Assembly (NCBI RefSeq): GCF_032444005.1
Contig: NC_091291.1
Span: 129,952,001 to 130,016,000, forward strand
Origin: Ranitomeya imitator
Lineage: Eukaryota
Length of the DNA stretch: 64,000 nucleotides
Direction of reading: 5' to 3'
In this document: piece by piece, positions 9,301 through 44,867 of the stretch
Position numbering within the stretch: position 1 is the first letter of the stretch
How the letters are laid out: each line of letters opens with the position of its first letter
Notes under the pieces: model-generated
What the model saw: the letters and a program-made list of their open reading frames with translations, nothing else
Databases searched by the model: none
Told to the model about the DNA's origin: nothing
Translations under genes and position numbers: made by a program

Positions 9301-9351
9301 GTGCTGGGCTCTGCAGGGAAGGACGTTGAACTTGTACATGTACAGGGGTCG

Positions 9352-12300
9352 GGGAAATGCTCTGCACATGGGAGGAGGAGAGGGGAGATGCAGTGCACAG
9401 GGAGGAGGAGAGGGGAGATGCAGTGCACAGGGAGGAGGAGAGGGGAGATGCAGTGCACAGGGAGGAGGAGAGGGGAGATGCTGTGCACAGGGAGGAGGAG
9501 AGGGGAGATGCTGTGCACAGGGAGGAGGAGAGGGGAGATGCAGTGCACAGGGAGGAGGAGAGGGGAGATACTGTGCACAGGGAGGAGGAGAGGGGAGATG
9601 CTGTGCACAGGGAGGAGGAGAGGGGAGATGCTGTGCACAGGGAGGAGGAGAGGGGTGATGCTGTGCACAGGGAGGAGGAGAGGGGAGATGCTGTGCACAG
9701 GGAGGAGGAGAGGGGAGATGCTGTGTACAGGGAGGAGGAGAGGGGAGATGCTGTGTACAGGGAGGAGGAGAGGGGAGATGCTGTGTACAGGGAGGAGGAG
9801 AGGGGAGATGCAGTGCACAGGGAGGAGGAGAGGGGAGATGCTGTGCACAGGGAGGAGGAGAGGGGAGATGCTGTGCACAGGAAGGAGGAGGAGGGGAGAT
9901 GCTGTGCACAGGGAGGAGGAGAGGGGAGATGCTGTGCACATGGGAGGAGGAGAGGGGAGATACTGTGCACAGGGAGGAGGAGAGGGGAGATGCTGTGCAC
10001 AGGGAGGAGGAGAGGGGAGATGCTGTGCACATGGGAGGAGAGGGGAGATGCTGTGCACAGGGAGGAGGAGAGGGGAGATACTGTGCACAGGGAGGAGGAG
10101 AGGGGAGATGCTGTGCACAGGGAGGAGGAGAGGGGAGATGCTGTGCACAGGGAGGAGGAGAGGGGAGATGCTGTGCACAGGAAGGAGGAGGAGGGGAGAT
10201 GCTGTGCACAGGGAGGAGGAGAGGGGAGATGCTGTGCACATGGGAGGAGGAGAGGGGAGATACTGTGCACAGGGAGGAGGAGAGGGGAGATGCTGTGCAC
10301 AGGGAGGAGGAGAGGGGAGATGCTGTGCACATGGGAGGAGAGGGGAGATGCTGTGCACAGGGAGGAGGAGAGGGGAGATACTGTGCACAGGGAGGAGGAG
10401 AGGGGAGATGCTGTGCACAGGGAGGAGGAGAGGGGAGATGCTGTGCACAGGGAGGAGGAGAGGGGAGATGCTGTGCACAGGAAGGAGGAGGAGGGGAGAT
10501 GCTGTGCACAGGGAGGAGGAGAGGGGAGATGCTGTGCACATGGGAGGAGGAGAGGGGAGATACTGTGCACAGGGAGGAGGAGAGGGGAGATGCTGTGCAC
10601 AGGGAGGAGGAGAGGGGAGATGCTGTGCACAGGGAGGAGGAGAGGGGAGATGCTGTGCACAGGGAGGAGGAGAGGGGAGATGCAGTGCACAGGGAGGAGG
10701 AGAGGGGAGATGCAGTGCACAGGGAGGAGGAGAGGGGAGATGCAGTGCACAGGGAGGAGGAGAGGGGAGATGCTGTGCACAGGGAGGAGGAGAGGGGAGA
10801 TGCTGTGCACAGGAAGGAGGAGGAGGGGAGATGCTGTGCACAGGGAGGAGGAGAGGGGAGATGCTGTGCACAGGGAGGAGGAGAGGGGAGATGCAGTGTA
10901 CAGGGAGGAGGAGAGGGGAAATGCTGTGCACATGGGAGGAGGAGAGGGGAGATGCTGTGCACAGGAAGGAGGAGAGGGGAGATGCTGTGCACAGGGAGGA
11001 GGAGAGGGGAGATGCTGTGCACAGGGAGGAGGAGAGGGGAGATGCTGTGCACAGGGAGGAGGAGAGGGGAGATGCTGTGCACATGGGAGGAGGAGAGGGG
11101 AGATGCTGTGCACAGGGAGGAGGAGAGGGGAGATGCTGTGCACATGGGAGGAAGAGAGGGGAGATGCTGTGCACAGGGAGGAGGAGAGGGGAGATGCTGT
11201 GCACAGGGAGGAGGAGAGGGGAGATGCTGTGCACAGGGAGGAGGAGAGGGGAGATGCTGTGCACAGGGAGGAGGAGAGGGGAGATGCTGTGCACAGGAAG
11301 GAGGAGAGGGGAGATGCTGTGCACATAGAGGAGGAGAGGGGAGATGCTGTGCACAGGAAGGAGGAGGAGGGGAGATGCTGTGCACAGGGAGGAGGAGGGG
11401 AGATGCTGTGCACAGGGAGGAGGAGAGGGTGATGCTGTGCACATGGAAGGAGGAGAGGGGAGATGCTGTGCACAGGGAGGAGGAGAGGGGAGATGCTGTG
11501 CACATAGAGGAGGAGAGGGGAGATGCTGTGCACAGGGAGGAGGAGAGGGGAGATGCAGTGCACAGGGAGGAGGAGAGGGGAGATGCTGTGCACATGGGAG
11601 GAGGAGAGGGGAGATGCAGTGCACAGGGAGGAGGAGAGGGGAGATGCTGTGCACAGGGAGGAGGAGAGGGGAGATGCTGTGCACATGGGAGGAGGAGAGG
11701 GGAGATGCTGTGCACATGGGAGGAGGAGAGGGGAGATGCAGTGCACAGGGAGGAGGAGAGGGGAGATGCTGTGCACAGGGAGGAGGAGAGGGGAGATGCT
11801 GTGCACAGGGAGGAGGAGAGGGGAGATGCTGTGCACAGGGAGGAGGAGAGGGGAGATGCTGTGCACAGGGAGGAGGAGAGGGGAGATGCAGTGCACAGGG
11901 AGGAGGAGAGGGGAGATGCTGTGCACAGGGAGGAGGAGAGGGGAGATGCTGTGCACATGGGAGGAGGAGAGGGGAGATGCTGTGCACAGGGAGGAGGAGA
12001 GGGGAGATGCTGTGCACAGGGAGGAGGAGAGGGGAGATGCAGTGCACAGGGAGGAGGAGAGGGGAGATGCAGTGCACAGGGAGGAGGAGAGGGGAGATGC
12101 AGTGCACATGGGAGGAGGAGAGGGGAGATGCTGTGCACATGGGAGGAGGAGAGGGGAGATGCTGTGCACAGGGAGGAGGAGAGGGGAGATGCTGTGCACA
12201 TAGAGGAGGAGAGGGGAGATGCTGTGCACATAGAGGAGGAGAGGGGAGATGCTGTGCACAGGAAGGAGGAGGAGGGGAGATGCTGTGCACAGGGAGGAGG

Positions 12301-15300
12301 AGGGGAGATGCTGTGCACAGGGAGGAGGAGAGGGGAGATGCTGTGCACATGGAAGGAGGAGAGGGGAGATGCTGTGCACAGGGAGGAGGAGAGGGGAGAT
12401 GCTGTGCACATAGAGGAGGAGAGGGGAGATGCAGTGCACAGGAAGGAGGAGAGGGGAGATGCTGTGCACATGGGAGGAGGAGAGGGGAGATGCAGTGCAC
12501 AGGGAGGAGGAGAGGGGAGATGCTGTGCACAGGGAGGAGGAGAGGGGAGATGCTGTGCACATGGGAGGAGGAGAGGGGAGATGCAGTGCACAGGGAGGAG
12601 GAGAGGGGAGATGCTGTGCACAGGGAGGAGGAGAGGGGAGATGCTGTGCACAGGGAGGAGGAGAGGGGAGATGCTGTGCACAGGGAGGAGGAGAGGGGAG
12701 ATGCTGTGCACAGGGAGGAGGAGAGGGGAGATGCTGTGCACAGGGAGGAGGAGAGGGGAGATGCTGTGCACAGGGAGGAGGAGAGGGGAGATGCTGTGCA
12801 CATGGGAGGAGGAGAGGGGAGATGCTGTGCACAGGGAGGAGGAGAGGGGAGATGCTGTGCACATAGAGGAGGAGAGGGGAGATGCTGTGCACATAGAGGA
12901 GGGGAGATGCTGTGCACAGGAAGGAGGAGGAGGGGAGATGCTGTGCACAGGGAGGAGGAGGGGAGATGCTGTGCACATAGAGGAGGAGAGGGGAGATGCT
13001 GTGCACAGGAAGGAGGAGGAGGGGAGATGCTGTGCACAGGGAGGAGGAGGGGAGATGCTGTGCACAGGGAGGAGGAGAGGGGAGATGCTGTGCACAGGGA
13101 GGAGGAGAGGGGAGATGGTCTGCACATGGAGGAGAGGGGAGATGCTGTGCACAGGGAGGAGAAGGAGGGGAGATGCTGTGCACAGGAAGGAGGAGGAGGG
13201 GAGATGCTGTGCACAGGGAGGAGGAGAGGGGAGATGCTGTGCACAGGGAGGAGGAGAGGGGAGATGCTGTGCACAGGGAGGAGGAGAGGGGAGATGCTGT
13301 GCACAGGGAGGAGGAGAGGGGAGATGCTGTGCACAGGAAGGAGGAGGAGGGGAGATGCTGTGCACAGGGAGGAGGAGAGGGGAGATGCTGTGCACAGGGA
13401 GGAGGAGAGGGGAGATGCTGTGCACAGGGAGGAGAGGGGAGATGCTCTGCACATGGAGCAGAGGGGAGATGCTCTGCACAGGGAGGAGGAGAGGGAAGAT
13501 GCTGTGCACAGGGAGGAGGGGAGATGCTGTGCACAGGGAGGAGGAGAGGGAAGATGCTGTGCACAGGGAGGAGGAGAGGGGAGATGCTGTGCACAGGGAG
13601 GAGGAGAGGGGAGATGCTGTGCACAGGGAGGAGGAGAGGGGAGATGGTCTGCACATGGAGAAGAGGGGAGATGCTGTGCACATAGAGGAGGAGAGGGGAG
13701 ATGCTGTGCACAGGAAGGAGGAGGAGGGGAGATGCTGTGCACAGGGAGGAGGAGAGGGGAGAGGCTGTGCACAGGGAGGAGAGGGGAGATGCTGTGCACA
13801 GGGAGGAGGAGAGGGGAGATGCTGTGCACATAGAGGAGGAGAGGGGAGATGCTGTGCACAGGAAGGAGGAGGGGAGATGCTGTGCACATAGAGGAGGAGA
13901 GGGGAGATGCTGTGCACAGGAAGGAGGAGGAGGGGAGATGCTGTGCACAGGGAGGAGGAGGGGAGATGCTGTGCACATAGAGGAGGAGAAGGGAGATGCT
14001 GTGCACAGGAAGGAGGAGGAGGGGAGATGCTGTGCACAGGGAGGAGGAGAGGGGAGATGCTGTGCACAGGGAGGAGGAGAGGGGAGATGGTCTGCACATG
14101 GAGGAGAGGGGAGATGCTGTGCACAGGGAGGAGAAGGAGGGGAGATGCTGTGCACAGGAAGGAGGAGGAGGGGAGATGCTGTGCACAGGAAGGAGGAGAG
14201 GGGAGATGCTGTGCACGTGGGAGGAGGAGAGGGGAGATGCTGTGCACAGGGAGGAGGAGAGGAGATGCTGTGCACAGGAAGGAGGAGAGGGGAGATGCTG
14301 TGCACGTGGGAGGAGGAGAGGGGAGATCCTATGCACAGGGAGGAGGAGAGGGGAGATGCTGTGCACAGGGAGGAGGAGAGGGGAGATGCTCTGCACATGG
14401 AAGGAGGAGAGGGGAGATGCTGTGCACAGGTAGGAGGAGAGGGGAGATGCACTGCACAGGAAGGAGGAGGGGAGATGCTCTGCACAGGAAGGAGGGGAGA
14501 TGCTCTGCACAGGGAGGAGGAGAGGGGAGATGCTGTGCACAGGGAGGAGGAGAGGGGAGATGCTGTGCACAGGGGGGAGGAGAGGGGAGATGCTGTGCAC
14601 AGGGAGGAGGAGAGGGGAGATGCTGTGCACAGGGAGGAGGAGAGGGGAGATGCTGTGCACAGGGAGGAGGAGAGGGGAGATGCTGTGCACAGGGAGGAGG
14701 AGAGGGGAGATGCTGTGCACAGGGAGGAGGAGAGGGGAGATGCTGTGCACAGGAAGGAGGAGGAGGGGAGATGCTGTGCACAGGGAGGAGGAGAGGGGAG
14801 ATGCTGTGCACGTGGGAGGAGGAGAGGGGAGATGCTGTGCACAGGGAGGAGGAGAGGGGAGATGCTGTGCACAGGAAGGAGGAGAGGGGAGATGCTGTGC
14901 ACGTGGGAGGAGGAGAGGGGAGATCCTGTGCACAGGGAGGAGGAGAGGGGAGATGCTGTGCACAGGGAGGAGGAGAGGGGAGATGCTGTGCACATGGGAG
15001 GAGGAGAGGGGATATGCTGTGCACAGGTAGGAGGAGAGGGGAGATGCTGTGCACAGGGAGGAGGAGAGGGGAGATGCACTGCACAGGGAGGAGGAGGGGA
15101 GATGCTCTGCACAGGAAGGAGGGGAGATGCTCTGCACAGGGAGGAGGAGAGGGGAGATGCTGTGCACAGGGAGGAGAGGGGAGATGCTGTGCACAGGGAG
15201 GAGGAGAGGGGAGATGCTGTGCACAGGGAGGAGGAGAGGGGAGATGGTCTGCACATGGAGGAGAGGGGAGATGCTGTGCACATAGAGGAGGAGAGGGGAG

Positions 15301-18300
15301 ATGCTGTGCACAGGGAGGAGGAGAGGGGAGATGCTGTGCACAGGGAGGAGGAGAGGGGAGATGCTGTGCACAGGGAGGAGGAGAGGGGAGATGCTGTGCA
15401 CATAGAGGAGGAGAGGGGAGATGCTGTGCACAGGAAGGAGGAGGAGGGGAGATGCTGTGCACAGGGAGGAGGAGAGGGGAGATGCTGTGCACAGGAAGGA
15501 GGAGGAGGGGAGATGCTGTGCACAGGGAGGAGGAGAGGGGAGATGCTGTGCACGTGGGAGGAGGAGAGGGGAGATGCTGTGCACAGGGAGGAGGAGAGGG
15601 GAGATGCTGTGCACAGGAAGGAAGAGAGGGGAGATGCTGTGCACGTGGGAGGAGGAGAGGGGAGATCCTGTGCACAGGGAGGAGGAGAGGGGAGATGCTG
15701 TGCACAGGGAGGAGGAGAGGGGAGATGCTGTGCACATGGGAGGAGGAGAGGGGATATGCTGTGCACAGGTAGGAGGAGAGGGGAGATGCTGTGCACAGGG
15801 AGGAGGAGAGGGGAGATGCACTGCACAGGGAGGAGGAGGGGAGATGCTCTGCACAGGAAGGAGGGGAGATGCTCTGCACAGGGAGGAGGAGAGGGGAGAT
15901 GCTGTGCACAGGGAGGAGAGGGGAGATGCTGTGCACAGGGAGGAGGAGAGGGGAGATGCTGTGCACAGGGAGGAGGAGAGGGGAGATGGTCTGCACATGG
16001 AGGAGAGGGGAGATGCTGTGCACATAGAGGAGGAGAGGGGAGATGCTGTGCACAGGGAGGAGGAGAGGGGAGATGCTGTGCACAGGGAGGAGGAGAGGGG
16101 AGATGCTGTGCACAGGGAGGAGGAGAGGGGAGATGCTGTGCACATAGAGGAGGAGAGGGGAGATGCTGTGCACAGGAAGGAGGAGGAGGGGAGATGCTGT
16201 GCACAGGGAGGAGGAGAGGGGAGATGCTGTGCACAGGGAGGAGGAGAGGGGAGATGCTGTGCACAGGGAGGAGGAGAGGGGAGATGGTCTGCACATGGAG
16301 GAGAGGGGAGATGCTGTGCACAGGGAGGAGAAGGAGGGGAGATGCTGTGCACAGGAAGGAGGAGGAGGGGAGATGCTGTGCACAGGGAGGAGGAGAGGGG
16401 AGATGCTGTGCACAGGGAGGAGGAGAGGGGAGATGCTGTGCACAGGGAGGAGGAGAGGGGAGATGCTGTGCACAGGGAGGAGGAGAGGGGAGATGCTGTG
16501 CACAGGGAGGAGGAGAGGTGAGATGCTGTGCACAGGAAGGAGGAGGAGGGGAGATGCTGTGCACAGGAAGGAGGAGGAGGGGAGATGCTGTGCACAGGGA
16601 GGAGGAGAGGGGAGATGCTGTGCACAGGGAGGAGGAGAGGGGAGATGCTGTGCACAGGGAGGAGGAGAGGGGAGATGCTGTGCACAGGGAGGAGGAGAGG
16701 GGAGATACTCTGCACATGGAGCAGAGGGGAGATGCTGTGCACAGGGAGGAGGAGAGGGAAGATGCTGTGCACAAGGAGGAGGAGAGGGGAGATGCTGTGC
16801 ACAGGGGGGAGGAGAGGGAAGATGCTGTGCACAGGGAGGAGGAGAGGGGAGATGCTGTGCACAGGGAGGAGGAGAGGGGAAATGCTGTGCACAGGGAGGA
16901 GGAGAGGGGAGATGGTCTGCACATGGAGGAGAGGGGAGATGCTGTGCACATAGAGGAGGAGAGGGGAGATGCTGTGCACAGGAAGGAGGAGGAGGGGAGA
17001 TGCTGTGCACAGGGAGGAGGAGAGGGGAGATGCTGTGCACATAGAGGAGGAGAGGGGAGATGCTGTGCACAGGAAGGAGGAGGGGAGATGCTGTGCACAT
17101 AGGAGGAGAGGAGATGCTGTGCACAGGAAGGAGGATGAGGGGAGATGCTGTGCACAGGGAGGAGGAGGGGAGATGCTGTGCACATAGAGGAGGAGAGGGG
17201 AGATGCTGTGCACAGGGAGGAGGAGGAGGGGAGATGCTGTGCACAGGGAGGAGGAGAGGGGAGATGCTGTGCACAGGGAGGAGGAGAGGGGAGATGCTGT
17301 GCACAGGGAGGAGGAGAGGGGAGATGGTCTGCACATGGAGGAGAGGGGAGATGCTGTGCACAGGGAGGAGAAGGAGGGGAGATGCTGTGCACAGGAAGGA
17401 GGAGGAGGGGAGATGCTGTGCACAGGGAGGAGGAGAGGGGAGATGCTGTGCACAGGGAGGAGGAGAGGGGAGATGCTGTGCACAGGGAGGAGGAGAGGGG
17501 AGATGCTGTGCACAGGGAGGAGGAGAGGGGAGATGCTGTGCACAGGGAGGAGGAGAGGGGAGATGCTGTGCACAGGGAGGAGGAGAGGGAAGATGCTGTG
17601 CACAGGGAGGAGGAGAGGGGAGATGCTCTGCACATGGAGCAGAGGGGAGATGCTCTGCACAGGGAGGAGAAGAGGGAAGATGCTGTGCACAGGGAGGAGG
17701 AGAGGGGAGATGCTGTGCACAGGGGAGGAGAGGGAAGATGCTGTGCACAGTTAGGAGGAGAGGGGAGATGCTGTGCACAGGAAGGAGGAGAGGGAAGATG
17801 CTGTGCACAGTTAGGAGGAGAGGGGAGATGCTGTGCACAGTTAGGAGAGGGGAGATGCTGTGCACAGTTAGGAGGAGAGGGGAGATGCTGTGCACAGTTA
17901 GGAGGAGAGGGAAGATGCTGTGCACAGGGAGGAGGAGAGGAGAGATGCTGTGCACAGGGAGGAGGAGAGGGGAGATGCTGTGCACAGGGAAGAGAGGGGA
18001 GATGCTGTGCACAGGGAGGAGGAGAGGGGAGATGCTGTGCACAGGGAGGAGGAGAGGGGAGATGCTGTGCACAGGGAGGAGGAGAGGGGAGATGCTCTGC
18101 ACAGGGAGGAGAGGGGAGATTCTCTGCACAGGGAGGAGGAGAAGGGAGATGCTCTGCACAGGGAGGAGAGGGGAGATGCTGTGCACAGGGAAGAGAGGGG
18201 AGATGCTGTGCACAGGGAGGAGGAGAGGGGAGATGCTGTGCACAGGGAAGAGAGGGGAGATGGTGTGCACAGGGAGGAGGAGAGGGGAGATGCTCTGCAC

Positions 18301-18350
18301 AGGGAGGAGGAGAGGGGAGATGCTGTGCACAGGGAGGAGGAGAGGGAAGA
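9352..18350. repeat. About 9-kb 30-bp G-rich minisatellite (roughly 300 units)
   Basis: Unit GGGAGGAGGAGAGGGGAGATGCTGTGCACA with 27-31 bp variants. The unit has no stop codon, which produces the kb-long ORFs on both strands. Confidence 0.99.
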
Positions 18351-18414
18351 TTTTTTTTGTAGCCTTTTCATTGAACAGTGTCTAATCTGAAGAGGTTTCC
18401 TTTCAAGATCTGCT

Positions 18415-19440: not shown

Positions 19441-20214
19441 GGAATGAAAAATCAGGGATGGGGGGTTTTGTGTGTGTTTAAGTTCCCGGTCAGCTCCCGC
19501 CTCCCTCACCCTGTGCGCCACCCGCTGGCATTAAAATACTTACCCAGCTCCCTCGATGCTTCCTCTCAGCGTCGCAGCTTGTCCTGTATGAGCGGTCATG
19601 TGGTGCCGCACATTACAGTGATGAATATGCGGCTCCACCCCTATGGGGTTTAATCCATTTTGATTGGAAGCAATGATGACTGCATGTGCAGAAGAAAATG
19701 ATGATTTCAAGCATCGGCGCCCTTTTAGAGCAACCAGTCTGCTCTTAGAATTCAATCAGAATGATATCAGTTGCCTTGTCCTTGTTAAAACTTTCTCCTG
19801 AGTTAACGAGACGATCGCTGAAGTTGTGTAAGCAAGTCATTTTGTGGCAGGGCTGAATTTCAGTGGAAATAGGGCGTTTCTCATTAAGTTAATTTTCATG
19901 GCAAGTAATGACTCAATTTTTTTTTGCAATCCGCTACAAAAACTGAAGCAGCAAACTTTGAAAAAACCAAAATTTGTGACAAGTCCCATAACTTTTGGCC
20001 ACAATCGCACATCTTCTCTACACTGTATTGTCGCCAGTGCTGGGTATTGTCATTGTTCCTCCGAATAGAAATCATGATGCGAATGTGATCAGACTAGTAG
20101 TGCCCCAAGAAAGGCCTTGGGGTTGCAATCATGACCATGATGCCAAAATATCATTGTACTTCATATCCAGTGCAAGTTAAATGCCAGACATTTAAAAAGA
20201 TGACAGGCAGAGAA

Positions 20215-20295
20215 ACACACAGGAAGACGCCAGCGTCAGCTGCATTTACTTGTTTCCTGCACAGAAAAGGTAGAGGAGCGTTCATTACTGATCAT
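20215..20295 (+). promoter_or_regulatory. Putative CD3gamma/delta proximal promoter
   Basis: ETS cores CAGGAAG (20220-20226) and TTCCTG (20254-20259) lie directly upstream of exon 1, with no TATA box. Based on motifs only. Confidence 0.4.
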
Positions 20296-20328
20296 ATGCA
20301 GCGCTGGGAATCAACACGACACATCATC

Positions 20329-20386
20329 ATGGTCACCTTTTATTTTGGGCTTGTTGTTGCTTTCCTCGTTAAGGGCGCATTTTCAG
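20329..20386 (+). CDS. CD3G/D: CD3gamma/delta exon 1 (signal peptide MVTFYFGLVVAFLVKGAFS)
   Basis: ATG in Kozak context (atcATGG), hydrophobic leader, phase-1 donor CAG|gtcagt. Confidence 0.8.
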
Positions 20387-20584
20387 GTCAGTAGAGGGGA
20401 CATGGAAAGTGGTGCAAATTAGTTTTTTTTTTTTTTTAAATATTGCAGATATTAAACTAAATGTTGGGGGGATGCAACTGCAGATAAAATGGAAGCTGTA
20501 CACTAATTCGAGGAAAACAAATACTGCAATGATCACTTGTGATGACTTATTTTAATTTATTTTTTTCTGTCATTCTTTCCAAAG

Positions 20585-20632
20585 ACCCTGCCCAAGATAA
20601 AGACCCTGCCAAAGATAAAGACCCTGAAATCC
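20585..20632 (+). CDS. CD3G/D: CD3gamma/delta exon 2 (DPAQDKDPAKDKDPEI)
   Basis: Long pyrimidine tract with ccaaag| acceptor and |gtaagt donor; 48 nt, phase 1-1, in frame with exons 1 and 3. Confidence 0.75.
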
Positions 20633-23839: not shown

Positions 23840-24880
23840 TAAAATACCCCATTTATCATAACATAGAAATATAGGAAAATTTGTGTGTGAGGGTAATGTG
23901 ATATTTTCATCAAACAGTGGGCCCCGATCAATGTTACCGGGGGGCCCTTGGCACCCTTGTCTGACACTATCTGCTGAACGTAAGTTAAAATCTGTGCAGT
24001 GTAGGCAACATGGGCCCCACTTGGGTTTGCCAGGTGCTTCGAGTTCTGCTGCTTTACAAGGGGCTGCCATGTTTTTTTCCAGTAATACCAAAATGCAAAG
24101 TGTAAGTACAGGTACTTTCCAGTATGCCATTCCTTCCTTTTCAGTGACCCTGATAGATCCCATATGGCGCTGTCTGTCTTCATACTAGTAGGTCACGTGC
24201 CGACCATCCAACCATGTGATCTATTGCGGTTGGTTTCGCCCACCAATTTATATGTGCTCCCTAACAATACACACATGGGACAGCTCCATCACTGCATTTA
24301 CCATAAAAGCTTCCCCTTGAAAAAGCAAACATATTGGAAGGCGAAACGCGCGTCGGGGTCTCTGTTGGTAGGATCCGACCCGGTGTATACTGCCCTATTA
24401 TTCAATACTGGTAAGCGCCGTTCATTACTGTTATTTTAGGCTGTGGGATATTTTTTACCCACTGGTTCACTTTCACAATTGACTTCGGGCTGCTTTTCCT
24501 TTTTGGCATCATGCATGTTATATAGGGGCAGTTCACGCCGGGGGATGCTCACCCTTTTAACTATCCTTATGCACTTTATTGTATATTGACTTGTTATGCA
24601 CTTTGTGCTTGTTAACTTAATACAATTTACTATCTTTCATTACTTTTATGCTCCCTTGGTACTCCTTTTTTAGTTATTTACTATAAAAGCGCATGCACGC
24701 AAATTACATACCATGCATACGTGGTCCGAGACCCAATATTGACCCATAAGATTGCATTAGAGTAAAGCATGCACTTTCTGAGATCCCTGTAGGCATTTAG
24801 TAAGGCAGATAAATTAATTATTGACAATGAAATTCTATATTTGTTTTACTTTGCATAAATCAATAGTACAAAAATACACG
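23840..24880 (+). mobile_element. Penelope-like element remnant (pseudo-LTR region)
   Basis: Inferred from the embedded PLE-type hammerhead; no RT or GIY-YIG ORF recognised. Boundaries approximate. Confidence 0.4.
24313..24358 (+). ncRNA. Type I hammerhead ribozyme, U3-A8 core variant
   Basis: CCCC-TTGAAAA-A-GC(aaacatattggaag)GC-GAAA-CGCGCG-TC-GGGG. Stem I is CCCC/GGGG, stem III is palindromic, and the predicted cut follows GUC at 24354. Confidence 0.7.
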
Positions 24881-25935: not shown

Positions 25936-26133
25936 ATGTAAATGATGACATCTTGTACCTTAAATGTGCTAAGGATTACAACTGGACAAAGCTGGATGGT
26001 GAAACAGTGGCTAGTGGTAAGGACCTGAATTTGGGCTCCTTATGGAATGATCCTCGCGGTATCTATGCCCTCAAAAAAGCTGATGGCTCTGAAGACCATT
26101 TAGAACCTAAATATCTCCATGTGTTTGTGAGAA
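25936..26133 (+). CDS. CD3G/D: CD3gamma/delta exon 3 (Ig-like domain)
   Basis: cag|...|gtgagt, 198 nt, phase 1-1. Encodes VNDDILYLKCAKDYNWTKLDGETVASGKDLNLGSLWNDPRGIYALKKADGSEDHLEPKYLHVFVR with the CD3gamma/delta signature LG..W.DPRGIY. Confidence 0.92.
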
Positions 26134-26745: not shown

Positions 26746-28190
26746 CATACAGATCCTACACCAGATCTCCTCTGCGTATATACTATAGAGAATACCCTCT
26801 CTGCGTACAGACCCTATACCAGATCTCCTCTCCTTACAGACCCTAGACCAGATCTCCTCTGCGTACAGACCCTAGACCAGATCTCCTCTCCATACAGACC
26901 CTAGACCAGATCTCCTCTGCGTACAGACCCTATACCAGATCTCCTCTGTGTACAGACCCTATACCACATCTCCTCTGTGTACAGACCCTATACCAGATCT
27001 CCTCTCCATACAGACCCTATACCACATCTCCTCTGTGTACAGACCCTATACCAGATCTCTTCTCCATACAGACCCTATACCACATCTCCTCTGTGTACAG
27101 ACCCTATACCAGATCTCCTCTCCATACAGACCCTATACCACATCTCCTCTGCGTACAGACCCTATACCAGATCTCCTCTCCGTACAGACCCTATACCAGA
27201 TCTCCTCTGTGTACAGACCCTATACCAGATCTCCTCTGTGTACAGACCCTATACCAGATCTCCTCTGTGTACAGACCCTATACCTGATCTCCTCTGTGTA
27301 CAGACCCTATACTAGATCTCCTCTGTGTACAGACCCTATACCAGATCTCTGCGTACAGACCCTATACCAGATCTCCTCTGCGTACAGACCCTATACCAGA
27401 TCTCCTCTGTGTACAGACCCTATACCAGATCTCCTCTGTGTACAGACCCTATACCAGATCTCCTCTCCATACAGACTCTAGACCAGATCTCCTCTCCATA
27501 CAGACTCTAGACCAGATCTCCTCTCCATACAGACTCTAGACCAGATCTCCTCTCCATACAGACCCTATACCAGATCTCTGTGTACAGACCCTATACCAGA
27601 TCTCCTCCGTGTACAGACCCTAGTCCAGATCTCCTCTGCGTACAGACCCTATACCAGATCTCCTCTGTGTACAGACCCTATACCAGATCTCCTCTGTGTA
27701 CAGACCCTATACCAGATCTCCTCTGTGTACAGACCCTATACCAGATCTCCTCTGTGTACCGACACTAGGCCAGATCTCCTCTGTGTACAGACCCTAATCC
27801 AGATCCCCTCTGTGTACAGACCCTAGTCCAGATCTCCTCTGTGTACCGACACTAGGCCAGATCTCCTCTGTGTACTGACACTAGACCAGATCTCCTGTGC
27901 ATACAGACCCTAGACCAGATCTCCTCTGTGAACAGACCCTACACCAGATCTCCTCTCCATACAGACCCTAGACCAGATCTTCTCTACATACAGACCCTAG
28001 ACAAGATCTTCTCTGCATACAGACCCTAGACCAGGTCTTCTCTCCATACAGACCCTAGACCAGATCTTCTCTACATACAGACCCTAGACAAGATCTTCTC
28101 TGCATACAGACCCTAGACCAGATCTCCTCTCCATACAGACCCTAGACCAGATCTCCTTTACATACAGACCCTAGACCAAGCTTCCCCTTT
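26745..28190. repeat. 29-bp minisatellite (about 50 copies) in CD3gamma/delta intron 3
   Basis: Unit CCAGATCTCCTCTGTGTACAGACCCTATA; period 29 checked at 27182 and 27211. Confidence 0.97.
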
Positions 28191-28670: not shown

Positions 28671-28802
28671 GATGCATGAACTGCATAGAGCTGAACCCGG
28701 GAACCATTGCTGGCTTCATCGTAGCTGATGTAATTATGATTGGTCTTATCGCCATGGCTGTATATTTTGTTTCTGGATCAGAAATGCGTCGCCCAGCACG
28801 AG
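28671..28802 (+). CDS. CD3G/D: CD3gamma/delta exon 4 (CxxC stalk plus transmembrane)
   Basis: 132 nt encoding RCMNCIELNPGTIAGFIVADVIMIGLIAMAVYFVSGSEMRRPAR: CxxCxE motif and an intramembrane Asp. Confidence 0.96.
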
Positions 28803-30126: not shown

Positions 30127-30170
30127 CTTCTGACAAACAGAATCTGATTGAAAACAATGCTGACTATCAG
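30127..30170 (+). CDS. CD3G/D: CD3gamma/delta exon 5 (ASDKQNLIENNADYQ)
   Basis: tttttag|...CAG|gtgagt, 44 nt. Contains a DxxxLI motif like human CD3G SDKQTLL and the first ITAM tyrosine. Confidence 0.95.
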
Positions 30171-32717: not shown

Positions 32718-32786
32718 GTGTTAGGCCGGCGTGATAACGATCAGTACAGCCACCTTGCTCCTCGCCCTAAGAGAGGAGGCTTTTGA
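32718..32786 (+). CDS. CD3G/D: CD3gamma/delta exon 6 (VLGRRDNDQYSHLAPRPKRGGF*)
   Basis: ttttctcag| acceptor; completes the ITAM YQVL-x7-YSHL; TGA stop. Confidence 0.95.
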   Translation: MLGRRDNDQYSHLAPRPKRGGF

Positions 32787-33419: not shown

Positions 33420-35000
33420 CTGCTTGAGGTCAGGAGGAAAGTTAGGGTCAGAAATGGGAGGACGGTACTAGAAACAAAGCCAGCAGGCAGGAACGAGGTC
33501 AGGAGGATAGCCGGGGTCAGAATGGGAGGACGGTACCAGACTCAAAACCAGCAGGCAGGAACGAGGTCAAGAGGATAGCCAGGGTCAGGAATGGGAGGAT
33601 GGTACCAGACTCAAAACCAGCAGGCAGGAACGAGGTTAGGAGGATAGCCGGGATCAGGAATGGGAGGACGGTGCCAGAGTAAAAACCAGCAGGTAAGAAT
33701 GAGGTCAGAAGGATAGCCGGAGTCAGAAATGGGAGGACAGTACCAGAGTCAAAACCAGCAGGCAGGAACGAGGTCAGGAGGATAGCTGGGATCAGGAATG
33801 GGAGGGCAGTACCAGAGTAAAAACCAGCAGGCAGGAACGAGGTCAGGAGGATAGCCGGGGTCAGGAATGGGAGGGTTGTTCCAGAGTAAAAACCAGCAGG
33901 CAGGAATGAGGTCAGGAGGGTAGCCGGGGGCAGAAATTGGAGGACAGTACCAGAGTCAAAACCAGCAGGCAGTAACTAGGTCAGGAGGATAGTTGGGGTC
34001 AGGAATGGGAGGACAGTACCACAGTCAAAACCAGCAGGCAGGAACGAGGTCAGGAGGATAGACCGGATCAGGAATGTGAGGACAGTATGAGAGTCAAAAC
34101 CAGCAGGCAGGAACGAGGTCAGGAGGATAGTTTGGGTGAGAAATGGTAGGATGGTACTAGAGTCAAAACCAGCAGACAGGAATGAGGTTAGGAGGATACT
34201 TGGGGTCAGAAATGGGAGAATGATAACAGGCATAACAAAGCAGGCAGGAATGAGGTCAGTAGGATAGCCGGGATCAGGAATGGAAGGACGGTATGAGAGT
34301 CAAAACCAGCACACAGGAACGAGGTCAGGAGGATAGTTTGGGTGAGAAATGGGAGTACGGTACCAGAGTAAAAACTAGCAGGTGGGAACAAGGTCAGGAG
34401 GATAGTTGGGGGTCAGAAATGGGAGAACGATACCAGAGGCAAAGCCAGCAGGCAGGAATGAGGTCAGGAGGATAGCCGGGATAAGGAATGGGAGGGCAGT
34501 ACCAGAGTAAAAACCAGCAGGCAGGAATGAGATCAGGAGGATAGTTGGGGTCAGAAATGGGATAAAGTGTAAAGGAACAAAACCAGCAGACGGAAACAAG
34601 GTCAGAGGGATAGCCGGTGTCAAATTAAGAGGTACAGAACAAAGACAAAAACCATCAGAGAGGAATGAGGTCAGGAGGAAAGCGGGGGGGGGGGGGTGAA
34701 CAGAGTCAGGATGGTACCAGACAAAGCCAGCATGCAGGTACATTTTCAGGACAATAACCAGTGTCAGAACAGGAAAGACAATACAAAAAAACAAAACCAG
34801 CAGGTGTTGCTGATGTTAGGAGGATAGCCAATGTCAAAACAGGAATGGGATCAGACAGGAACTAGCTTAGGAGGATAGCCGAGGGCAAACCCACAGGCAC
34901 AGAACCAGGAGGATCGCAGGGGTCAGACACAGGAGGACAGTACCGCAGACAAAACTAGCGAGCAGGGATGACGTCAGGAGGATAGCCAAAGACAATATAA
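33420..35000. repeat. 68-69-bp tandem repeat (about 22 copies)
   Basis: Unit CAGCAGGCAGGAACGAGGTCAGGAGGATAGCCGGGGTCAG(A)AATGGGAGGACGGTACCAGAGTCAAAAC; periods 68 and 69 at 33481, 33549 and 33618. Confidence 0.93.
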
Positions 35001-36994: not shown

Positions 36995-37464
36995 CTGTAT
37001 GAGCAAAAATTTTAAAAATCATAGTGTTTACACTCTGTATGTAGAAATTAAAGAGGACCCATCATTTGCCAAAAACATGATTTATTTATTACCCGGTGTA
37101 AATGCCGCTGTTCTCCTGAATCTGGCGATGTTTTTCTTATGTTCCTGTCACTCTCCATTCCTGAGATATGGCCCCTTCTTTCCCATTTGTAAATTTAGTC
37201 TATTTAATCAAGTGGGCGTGGTCCTCAACTCTTTTTTTGTGGGCATCTTCTTAAGGATCTCGCCCAGTTGTCTAAAAAAAAAACTATAGGGAAAAAAGGG
37301 CCCATATCTCAGGAATGGAGAGGCGCAGGAACAAAAGGAAAACGGTGCCGGATTCAGGAAAACAGCGGCATTTACACCAGGTAAAAAAAATACTTGTTTA
37401 GGGCAACTGAAAGGTCTTATTTAAATCCAAAGAGATTTACTTTTGTGCCTTATAGGATGGGTAC

Positions 37465-37626
37465 CTTTTTTGCGAGCTCCTTTTGCAAATCCATTTTCTC
37501 TGATCTGACCAGGTTTTTTCTTGCAGAACATATACACAAAGACACAAACTCCAATGGTGATCAGGCAATCAGCGATCACAACAGAGGCCACCATGAGAAA
37601 GGAGACCTCCGTGCAGGTCTCACATA
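37465..37626 (-). CDS. CD3E: CD3E stalk, transmembrane and basic-rich exon
   Basis: 162 nt encoding VCETCTEVSFLMVASVVIADCLITIGVCVFVYMFCKKKPGQIRENGFAKGARKK: CxxCxE and a TM Asp; donor G|gtaccc. Confidence 0.95.
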
Positions 37627-44702: not shown

Positions 44703-44867
44703 CGTATGCATGTAGATAGAGGAAGTCATTGCTGCACTTGTATATCCCATTTTTATCTGAAGAATAATTTTCCAGGATTTTCTGGTGTTGATTATCTTTG
44801 AAATGTTGACCACTGGGACAGGTAATTGTCACTGTAAGTCCTGTGATATCCACCTGGAAATTGTGAT
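44703..44867 (-). CDS. CD3E: CD3E Ig-domain exon
   Basis: gtcag|AT...G|gtaagc, 165 nt. Encodes HNFQVDITGLTVTITCPSGQHFKDNQHQKILENYSSDKNGIYKCSNDFLYLHAY and joins in frame to VCETC, like human KVSISGTTVILTC...YLYLRARVCENC. Confidence 0.9.

What the first reader, a model, noticed from the sequence alone, without database searches (positions are those of the whole stretch)
25936..26133. CD3gamma/delta Ig domain lacks the second canonical cysteine
The F strand reads DPRGIY-A-L (GCC CTC) where CD3gamma and delta have DPRGxY-x-C. The B-strand Cys (LKCAK) remains, so the intradomain disulfide cannot form and one extracellular Cys is unpaired besides the CxxC stalk. The F-G loop is also long (KKADGSEDHLEPK). 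The rest of the gene is intact, arguing against a pseudogene. CTC is not one step from TGY, so a single base-call error is unlikely.
Basis: partly seen in the sequence, partly recalled or inferred. Interest (0 to 1): 0.7.

Follow-up and report, generated by a model that had tools for sequence, protein, structure and literature searches.

The report
Frog CD3 chain lacking Ig disulfide
The CD3gamma/delta signalling chain of the mimic poison frog's T-cell receptor has really lost the cysteine that normally staples its outer domain; many related frogs (not Xenopus or Rana) share the loss, the gene is otherwise intact, and its outer domain evolves unusually fast.

Summary
Window 25936-26133 (+) is the Ig exon of the only CD3gamma/delta gene found here. 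The window matches Ranitomeya imitator: all exons are 100% identical to NCBI XP_069597398/XP_069597399.

The F-strand Cys position is Leu (CTC, 26070-26072). The only Cys in the domain is the B-strand one (TGT, 25965-25967).

It is not an error or a pseudogene. R. variabilis and Dendrobates tinctorius carry the same CTC. The transmembrane and cytoplasmic exons show almost no amino-acid change among dendrobatids. AlphaFold gives a confident Ig fold that best matches human CD3gamma.

The loss is not private to this species. Of 105 tetrapod CD3gamma/delta sequences, 94 keep the Cys. The 11 without it all come from 10 non-hylid hyloid frog species.

Relatives carry Arg (CGY) at this position.

Other hyloid lineages carry new Cys pairs. 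Only Ranitomeya and Dendrobates are left with a single Cys. Their CD3epsilon has no spare Cys.

Within Dendrobatidae the Ig exon has dN/dS of about 2.7-3.9, against 0.43 in other hyloids.

I found no paper describing any of this.

The parts
20329..20386 (+). CD3gamma/delta exon 1: conserved ATG and signal peptide (MVTFYFGLVVAFLVKGAFS), phase-1 donor
   Evidence: Other hyloid orthologues start at this Met.
20585..20632 (+). Exon 2: acidic and Pro-rich N-terminal extension of the mature chain (DPAQDKDPAKDKDPEI), encoded by 2.6 copies of an 18-bp tandem repeat
25936..26133 (+). Exon 3: the whole Ig-like ectodomain (the finding)
   Evidence: Pfam PF16680. AlphaFold model pLDDT 87.9.
25965..25967 (+). 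TGT, the B-strand Cys and the only Cys of the Ig domain
26070..26072 (+). CTC (Leu) at the position of the canonical F-strand Cys
26017..26018 (+). Internal GT (G|GTAAGG) used as a donor in NCBI isoform X2. That isoform drops the last 38 residues of the Ig exon but stays in frame.
   Evidence: P0005. Based on annotation only, not verified with reads.
28671..28802 (+). Exon 4: stalk CMNC plus the transmembrane helix with Asp (GFIVADVIM)
30127..30170 (+). Exon 5: SDKQNLI motif and the first ITAM Tyr (ADYQ)
32718..32786 (+). Exon 6: second half of the ITAM (VLGRRDNDQYSHL...) and the stop codon
44703..44867 (-). CD3epsilon Ig exon, the partner chain. It keeps both canonical Cys (ITC ... YKC) and has no extra Cys.
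37463..37626 (-). CD3epsilon stalk (CETC) and transmembrane exon. The 3' end is approximate.

Best explanation
This exon encodes the Ig-like ectodomain of the single CD3gamma/delta chain of a dendrobatid frog. The window matches Ranitomeya imitator.

The canonical B-F disulfide was lost in an ancestor of the non-hylid hyloid frogs, by Cys TGY > Arg CGY. In the dendrobatid line Arg then became Leu (CGC > CTC).

A second Cys at the end of strand C' is still present in Phyllobates and Anomaloglossus. It was lost in the common ancestor of Dendrobates and Ranitomeya. In these two genera the domain therefore has one Cys and no possible intradomain disulfide.

The chain is still a working CD3 subunit.
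- It folds as an Ig domain (inferred from the model).
- It pairs with CD3epsilon through its G strand and the CxxC stalk (inferred from the mammalian structures).
- It docks to the TCR through the transmembrane Asp and signals through an intact ITAM (these motifs are shown in the sequence).

The remaining B-strand Cys is most likely a buried free thiol. It would pack against the Leu that replaced its partner and against the C-strand Trp, as in other Ig domains that lack the disulfide. This point is inferred.

The ectodomain is not decaying neutrally. In Dendrobatidae it changes faster than synonymous sites, while the membrane and cytoplasmic parts are frozen.
For: Sequence and gene model. P0042 and P0005 are 100% identical to every window exon.

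Clade-level loss: 94 of 105 CD3gamma/delta sequences have the F-strand Cys. The 11 without it are all non-hylid Hyloidea.

Codon path:
- TGC/TGT in Mixophyes and Dendropsophus
- CGC/CGT/CGG in Rhinoderma, Bufo, Eleutherodactylus and Anomaloglossus
- CTC in Ranitomeya (both species) and Dendrobates
- TTC in Phyllobates

The gene tree gives Anomaloglossus,(Phyllobates,(Dendrobates,Ranitomeya)).

Function retained: among dendrobatids the transmembrane and cytoplasmic exons show 0-2 nonsynonymous against 5-10 synonymous differences. Pfam PF16680 scores 41.4 bits against a cut-off of 30.1. AlphaFold gives pLDDT 87.9 with strands A-G, and only the FG loop has low confidence. The best PDB matches are human CD3gamma chains, with TM 0.64-0.65 and probability 1.00.

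No second Ig exon for this gene exists in the window.

No partner Cys in CD3epsilon: the mature ectodomain of P0122 has only ITC, YKC and CETC.

Fast ectodomain evolution: omega is 3.9 (LRT p about 0.001), or 2.7 without the FG loop (p = 0.024). Other hyloids give 0.43.
Against: Burial of the lone Cys is inferred from Ig-fold topology. The tools return no model coordinates, so it was not measured. The AlphaFold model also leans on an alignment made mostly of disulfide-bearing homologues.

The Pfam score is much lower than for Xenopus (41 against 73 bits). NCBI also annotates an isoform that lacks half the domain. Both facts fit a weakened ectodomain.

The omega estimates rest on 51-61 codons and 3-4 species, with a single-omega model.

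The base of Hyloidea is unresolved in the gene tree. One loss plus hylid retention or reversal cannot be told apart from several independent losses.
Confidence: 0.75

Rival explanations
1. The unpaired B-strand Cys makes a new intermolecular disulfide, for example with a TCR chain, a second CD3gamma/delta or CD3epsilon. This would change how the complex is held together.
For: There is an odd number of ectodomain Cys in Ranitomeya and Dendrobates. In CD3 chains the B-strand Cys lies at the membrane-distal end of strand B (review PMC4558533). In the model it sits just past strand B, so it might be reachable.
Against: CD3epsilon of the same frog has only the two canonical pairs in its mature ectodomain. 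The same holds for Dendrobates tinctorius. The canonical B-strand Cys side chain points into the core (established Ig-fold knowledge). The replacement at the partner position is a hydrophobic Leu, which fits core packing. TCR constant regions were not examined.
Confidence: 0.1
2. The ectodomain is becoming dispensable. After the disulfide was lost, constraint relaxed and the Ig domain is degenerating. The chain would work mainly through its stalk, transmembrane helix and ITAM, and the truncated isoform would be a sign of this.
For: Ig-exon omega is not below 1 in Dendrobatidae. The Pfam score is low. Isoform X2 lacks 38 Ig residues.
Against: Omega is significantly above 1, not merely equal to 1 (p about 0.001 for the whole exon, 0.024 without the FG loop). 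There is no stop or frameshift in five dendrobatoid species. Long blocks stay invariant in four dendrobatids: LNLGSLWNDPR and the end of the G strand, VFVR. The Ig fold is confidently predicted.
Confidence: 0.13
3. It is an assembly or sequencing artefact, or a pseudogene copy.
For: None found.
Against: Two annotation records and 20 runs from 7 studies carry the exon. The same codon is present in two other species' assemblies. The ORF is intact, the splice sites are canonical, and the gene lies next to CD3epsilon. There is strong purifying selection on exons 4-6.
Confidence: 0.02

Closest known systems
Xenopus laevis CD3gamma/delta (Dzialo and Cooper 1997, cited in PMC4536121; P0035 here)
   Same: It is a single gamma/delta-type chain. 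It has one Ig exon, a CxxC stalk, a transmembrane Asp, an SDKQNL motif and an ITAM. It lies beside CD3epsilon.
   Different: Xenopus keeps both canonical Cys (LTC ... YVC). It scores 73 bits on PF16680, against 41 for the window's protein.
Human CD3gamma and CD3delta in solved TCR-CD3 complexes (for example 6JXR and 8ES7)
   Same: They are the best sequence matches (E = 7e-28) and the best fold matches (TM 0.64). The DPRGxY motif, the stalk, the transmembrane helix and the ITAM all align.
   Different: The human chains have the B-F disulfide, which a review (PMC4558533) says stiffens the top of the domain. The frog has Leu at that position, an FG loop five residues longer and a shorter BC loop.
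CD3gamma/delta of other non-hylid hyloid frogs (Bufo bufo, Engystomops, Eleutherodactylus, Rhinoderma, Pristimantis, Phyllobates, Anomaloglossus)
   Same: All lack the F-strand Cys. The gene structure is the same, and exons 4-6 are nearly identical.
   Different: They carry other Cys combinations:
- F-1 plus G strand in Bufo, Engystomops and Eleutherodactylus
- B plus the end of C' in Phyllobates and Anomaloglossus
- B plus the C-x-W position in Rhinoderma and Pristimantis

Only Ranitomeya and Dendrobates are left with a single Cys.
Ig-superfamily domains that naturally lack the B-F disulfide (for example CD2 domain 1 and CD58; from general knowledge, not tested here)
   Same: The Ig fold is kept by hydrophobic core packing alone.
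   Different: Those are adhesion domains that belong to families long known to lack the bond. Here the bond was lost inside a family where it is otherwise conserved in every other sequence sampled (94 of 105).

Membership tests
CD3gamma/delta chain (Pfam PF16680 Ig_4 ectodomain) | Ectodomain matches the CD3 gamma/delta Ig profile above the curated cut-off | tested here: met
   P0042 residues 67-248 score 41.4 bits against a cut-off of 30.1. The exon alone scores 26.1 bits, E = 1.3e-5.
CD3gamma/delta chain (Pfam PF16680 Ig_4 ectodomain) | Canonical intradomain disulfide between the B-strand and F-strand Cys | tested here: not met
   The F position is Leu (CTC 26070-26072) and the domain has a single Cys. 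This feature is typical of the family rather than essential to it. All other defining features are met.
CD3gamma/delta chain (Pfam PF16680 Ig_4 ectodomain) | Membrane-proximal CxxC stalk motif | tested here: met
   CMNC at the start of exon 4. It is invariant in the anuran alignments.
CD3gamma/delta chain (Pfam PF16680 Ig_4 ectodomain) | Acidic residue in the transmembrane helix | tested here: met
   GFIVADVIM in exon 4. The Asp is invariant in the hyloid and myobatrachoid alignment A2.
CD3gamma/delta chain (Pfam PF16680 Ig_4 ectodomain) | Cytoplasmic ITAM (YxxL-x7-YxxL) and a CD3gamma-type SDKQxL[LI] motif | tested here: met
   YQVL-GRRDNDQ-YSHL spans exons 5 and 6, and SDKQNLI lies in exon 5. 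The Pfam ITAM hit is weak, 15.2 bits.
CD3gamma/delta chain (Pfam PF16680 Ig_4 ectodomain) | Fold like solved CD3gamma or CD3delta ectodomains | tested here: met
   AlphaFold pLDDT 87.9. The top Foldseek hits are human CD3gamma chains, with TM 0.64-0.65 and probability 1.00.
CD3gamma/delta chain (Pfam PF16680 Ig_4 ectodomain) | Linkage to CD3epsilon | tested here: met
   CD3epsilon exons lie on the minus strand at 36.9-44.9 kb, convergent with this gene.
CD3gamma/delta chain (Pfam PF16680 Ig_4 ectodomain) | Expression in T cells and assembly with TCR and CD3epsilon | not testable with these tools
One search lists runs that look like RNA but are unconfirmed.

The most novel reading that the evidence does not exclude
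In the hyloid frog radiation the otherwise conserved B-F disulfide of CD3gamma/delta was lost. It was then replaced, lineage by lineage, by different new disulfides near the membrane-distal end of the domain:
- an F-G staple in Bufo, Engystomops and Eleutherodactylus
- B to the end of C' in Phyllobates and Anomaloglossus
- B to the start of C in Rhinoderma and Pristimantis

In Dendrobates and Ranitomeya nothing replaced it, and there the ectodomain has since been under positive selection (omega about 3-4). This would be a natural experiment on how much the rigidity of the CD3 ectodomain matters for TCR triggering. It may be driven by co-evolution with CD3epsilon and the TCR, or by a pathogen ligand.
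Probability: 0.35. Interest if true: 0.7.

Novelty: new variant of a known kind. Interest (0 to 1): 0.55.

Why it matters
The B-F disulfide at the top of each CD3 ectodomain is described as one of the elements that stiffen the CD3 heterodimers, so that force on the TCR reaches the membrane (PMC4558533).

A large frog clade that lives without it, and poison frogs that have no intradomain disulfide at all, give a natural test of that idea. They also give a set of ready-made variants for assembly and signalling assays: Arg, Leu, Phe or Ala at the F position, and three alternative Cys pairs.

The signal of positive selection on an invariant signalling subunit is unusual. If it holds, it points to co-evolution within the TCR complex or to an external ligand.

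For annotation, it shows that a missing canonical Cys in this gene is a clade character and not an error.

Tried and rejected
Local scripts did use the stored window file as a tblastn subject.

2. A second Ig exon that could supply the Cys. tblastn with eight anuran CD3gamma/delta proteins, six of them Cys-bearing, found only 25938-26132. Rejected.

3. A partner Cys in CD3epsilon. None in the mature ectodomain.

4. Intron divergence as a neutral yardstick. It is usable only for the closest pairs, for example K = 0.14 for R. imitator against D. tinctorius. Global alignments of more distant introns are unreliable.

5. The gene tree as a way to decide whether hylids kept or regained the Cys. The base of Hyloidea is an unresolved polytomy. 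Reversal from CGY to TGY would be a CpG transition, so it cannot be excluded.

6. Literature. Five full-text searches and three papers gave no mention of the loss. Dzialo and Cooper 1997 is not in the library.

7. The first representative search with the 65-residue exon returned mostly spurious repeat proteins. Only P0003 and P0005 were real hits.

Searches used the single exons by reference, or the database proteins P0042, P0005 and P0122, which are identical to the window's exons.

9. The human isoform P0120 returned was left out of alignment A3.

Full report
**1. What is at the coordinates**

Window 25936-26133 (+) is one exon bounded by ...acag| and |gtgagt. In frame it gives 65 residues without a stop. 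It contains LYLKC (B strand), YNW (C strand), LNLGSLWNDPRGIY-A-L (E to F) and YLHVFVR (G strand).

The only Cys codon is TGT at 25965-25967. The position where CD3gamma and CD3delta have the F-strand Cys is CTC (Leu) at 26070-26072. HMMER alignment to human CD3gamma places this Leu opposite the human Cys. It also shows an FG loop five residues longer than the human one.

**2. The gene and the organism**

Pattern scans and tblastn located the rest of the gene on the + strand.

| Exon | Coordinates | Content |
|---|---|---|
| 1 | 20329-20386 | ATG and signal peptide |
| 2 | 20585-20632 | N-terminal extension |
| 3 | 25936-26133 | Ig domain |
| 4 | 28671-28802 | CMNC stalk; transmembrane helix with Asp |
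| 5 | 30127-30170 | SDKQNLI; first ITAM Tyr |
| 6 | 32718-32786 | rest of the ITAM; stop |

All junctions are AG/GT and the phases agree.

Two NCBI proteins of Ranitomeya imitator match every exon at 100%. They are P0042 (XP_069597398.1, also CAJ0930438.1) and P0005 (XP_069597399.1). The window is therefore from that species or something indistinguishable from it.

I did not type or search a joined model. I used these database proteins and the single exons by reference.

CD3epsilon lies convergent on the minus strand. Its Ig exon is at 44703-44867, its stalk and transmembrane exon starts at 37626, and its proline-rich and ITAM exon is near 36.95 kb.

**3. Not an artefact and not a pseudogene**

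- Twenty runs from seven studies hold at least 94% of the exon's sampled words.
- R. variabilis and Dendrobates tinctorius, from separate assemblies, have the identical CTC codon.
- Only one Ig exon for this gene exists in the window.
- Pfam PF16680 is passed, at 41.4 bits against a cut-off of 30.1.
- AlphaFold with a 94-sequence alignment gives pLDDT 87.9 and pTM 0.73, with strands A, B, C, C', E, F and G. Only the FG loop has low confidence.
- The best PDB matches are human CD3gamma chains in TCR-CD3 complexes, with TM 0.64-0.65.
- Among dendrobatids, exons 4-6 show 0-2 nonsynonymous against 5-10 synonymous differences. That is strong purifying selection.

**4. How general the loss is**

Two homology searches gave 31 anuran species plus reptiles, birds and mammals. 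In a 105-sequence alignment the F-strand column is Cys in 94 sequences. The other 11 sequences, from 10 species, are all non-hylid Hyloidea:

- Ranitomeya imitator
- Ranitomeya variabilis
- Dendrobates tinctorius
- Phyllobates terribilis
- Anomaloglossus
- Rhinoderma
- Pristimantis
- Eleutherodactylus
- Bufo
- Engystomops

All 19 non-hyloid anurans keep the Cys. They include Ascaphus, Bombina, Discoglossus, the pipoids including Xenopus, the pelobatoids, the ranoids and the myobatrachoids. The two hylids, Hyla and Dendropsophus, keep it too.

The loss is therefore a clade character. It is neither private to this frog nor general to frogs. Five full-text searches found no description of it. The Xenopus paper on these genes does not mention CD3gamma/delta cysteines.

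**5. Codon history**

I fetched eleven orthologous loci and extracted the Ig exon from each. The codon at the F position is:

| Codon | Residue | Species |
|---|---|---|
| TGC, TGT | Cys | Mixophyes, Dendropsophus |
| CGC, CGT, CGC, CGG | Arg | Rhinoderma, Bufo, Eleutherodactylus, Anomaloglossus |
| CTC | Leu | Ranitomeya (both species), Dendrobates |
| CTG | Leu | Pristimantis |
| TTC | Phe | Phyllobates |
| GCT | Ala | Engystomops |

The path is TGY>CGY>CTC.

The gene tree gives Anomaloglossus,(Phyllobates,(Dendrobates,Ranitomeya)) but leaves the base of Hyloidea unresolved. I therefore cannot say whether hylids kept the Cys or regained it. A change from CGY to TGY is a CpG transition.

**6. 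Cysteine bookkeeping**

Counts are for the Ig exon.

| Species | Cys in Ig exon | Positions |
|---|---|---|
| Bufo | 2 | F-1, start of G (B-strand Cys lost) |
| Engystomops | 3 | F-1, start of G, C-x-W position (B-strand Cys lost) |
| Eleutherodactylus | 4 | B, end of C', F-1, start of G |
| Phyllobates, Anomaloglossus | 2 | B, end of C' |
| Rhinoderma, Pristimantis | 2 | B, two residues before the C-strand Trp |
| Ranitomeya, Dendrobates | 1 | B only (Ser or Thr at the C' position) |

The F-1 Cys and the G-strand Cys always occur together.

Judged from the strand order in the model, all these positions lie toward the membrane-distal end of the domain. I infer that the other lineages have replacement disulfides and that the Dendrobates plus Ranitomeya lineage has none. 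This is an inference from co-occurrence and topology, because no coordinates were available.

**7. Where the lone Cys goes**

The mature ectodomain of R. imitator CD3epsilon (P0122) has only its own canonical pair (ITC, YKC) and CETC. D. tinctorius is the same. There is thus no partner Cys in epsilon.

The canonical B-strand Cys points into the core, and Leu is a core-compatible replacement at the partner position. The most likely state is a buried free thiol. An intermolecular bond to a TCR chain is not excluded.

**8. Rate of evolution**

| Comparison | Measure | Value |
|---|---|---|
| R. imitator / D. tinctorius / P. terribilis, pairwise | Ig exon dN/dS | 1.4-3.3 |
| Same pairs | exons 4-6 dN | 0-0.011 |
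| Same pairs | exons 4-6 dS | 0.10-0.21 |
| Four dendrobatids, codon-model fit | omega | 3.9 (2dlnL = 11.1, p about 0.001 against omega = 1) |
| Same, FG loop removed | omega | 2.7 (p = 0.024) |
| Seven other species | omega | 0.43 (p about 1e-6, below 1) |

Long blocks remain invariant: LNLGSLWNDPR and the end of the G strand, VFVR.

This looks like positive selection on parts of the domain rather than decay. The data set is small (51-61 codons, 3-4 taxa, one omega for all sites and branches), so I rate it as suggestive.

**9. FG loop**

The loop has thirteen residues between the F position and the G-strand aromatic residue. That is five more than human CD3gamma. Anurans range from 5 (Pristimantis) to 15 (Mixophyes), and Aquarana also has 13. 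The loop is not exceptional.

**10. Limits**

- No reads could be laid. Expression, the choice between the two exon-3 donors, and the codon in cDNA remain untested here.
- The AlphaFold model depends on an alignment made mostly of disulfide-bearing homologues.
- TCR constant regions were not examined.

**11. Verdict**

It is a new variant of a known kind: a CD3gamma/delta chain whose Ig domain has no disulfide. It is one endpoint of a clade-wide remodelling of the cysteines in hyloid frogs. I found no description of it in the searchable literature.

Noticed in passing
window 26017-26018 (with 28671): NCBI isoform X2 (P0005) uses an internal donor G|GTAAGG inside the Ig exon. It joins ...GETVASG directly to CMNC in frame, which removes 38 residues (strands E to G). 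It rests on annotation only. R. variabilis has no such annotated isoform.
   Followed up: partly
window 20131-20328: The NCBI models of both Ranitomeya species start 43-66 codons upstream, in an open frame continuous with the signal peptide. All other hyloid orthologues start at the Met at 20329. The annotated N-terminal extension is probably not translated, or it would bury the signal peptide.
   Followed up: partly
window 20581-20626 (exon 2): An 18-bp tandem repeat (2.6 copies) encodes a DKDPAK-like acidic and Pro-rich N-terminus of the mature chain. The repeat number and sequence differ between R. imitator, R. variabilis and Phyllobates.
   Followed up: no
P0051 (Mantella aurantiaca): This ranoid poison frog keeps the F-strand Cys but has Tyr at the B-strand Cys position, plus two other Cys. 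It may be an independent break of the canonical pair. It rests on a single annotated model and was not checked at DNA level.
   Followed up: no
P0026, P0044 (Lithobates, Aquarana): Ranid CD3gamma/delta has four Ig-domain Cys: the canonical pair plus C-x-W and a Cys just before strand E. This suggests a second disulfide. Pyxicephalus and Gastrophryne have only the first extra Cys.
   Followed up: no
window 26748-28178 (intron 3): A 29-bp minisatellite of about 50 copies with 89% matches. It blocked the laying of reads.
   Followed up: no
window 9351-18351: A 9-kb array of a 30-bp unit (302 copies, 92% matches) upstream of the gene. GC is about 0.62 and GC skew about +0.67.
   Followed up: no
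window 33426-34688: A 69-bp tandem repeat (18 copies) between the 3' ends of CD3gamma/delta and CD3epsilon. On the minus strand it reads as a repeated YPPDLVPACWF-like frame.
   Followed up: no
window 24100-24600: The scan's note s1-279724 claims a hammerhead ribozyme at 24313-24379 in intron 2. No Rfam family reaches its gathering score in this stretch. The more permissive E-value mode was not tried.
   Followed up: partly
window 44703-44867 (-) and 38-43 kb: The CD3epsilon Ig domain is very short, with 33 residues between its two Cys. It also differs a good deal between R. imitator and D. tinctorius. The intron between its Ig exon and its stalk exon carries retroelement sequence (an RT-like frame near 40.5 kb).
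   Followed up: no
Nothing is known about why.
   Followed up: no
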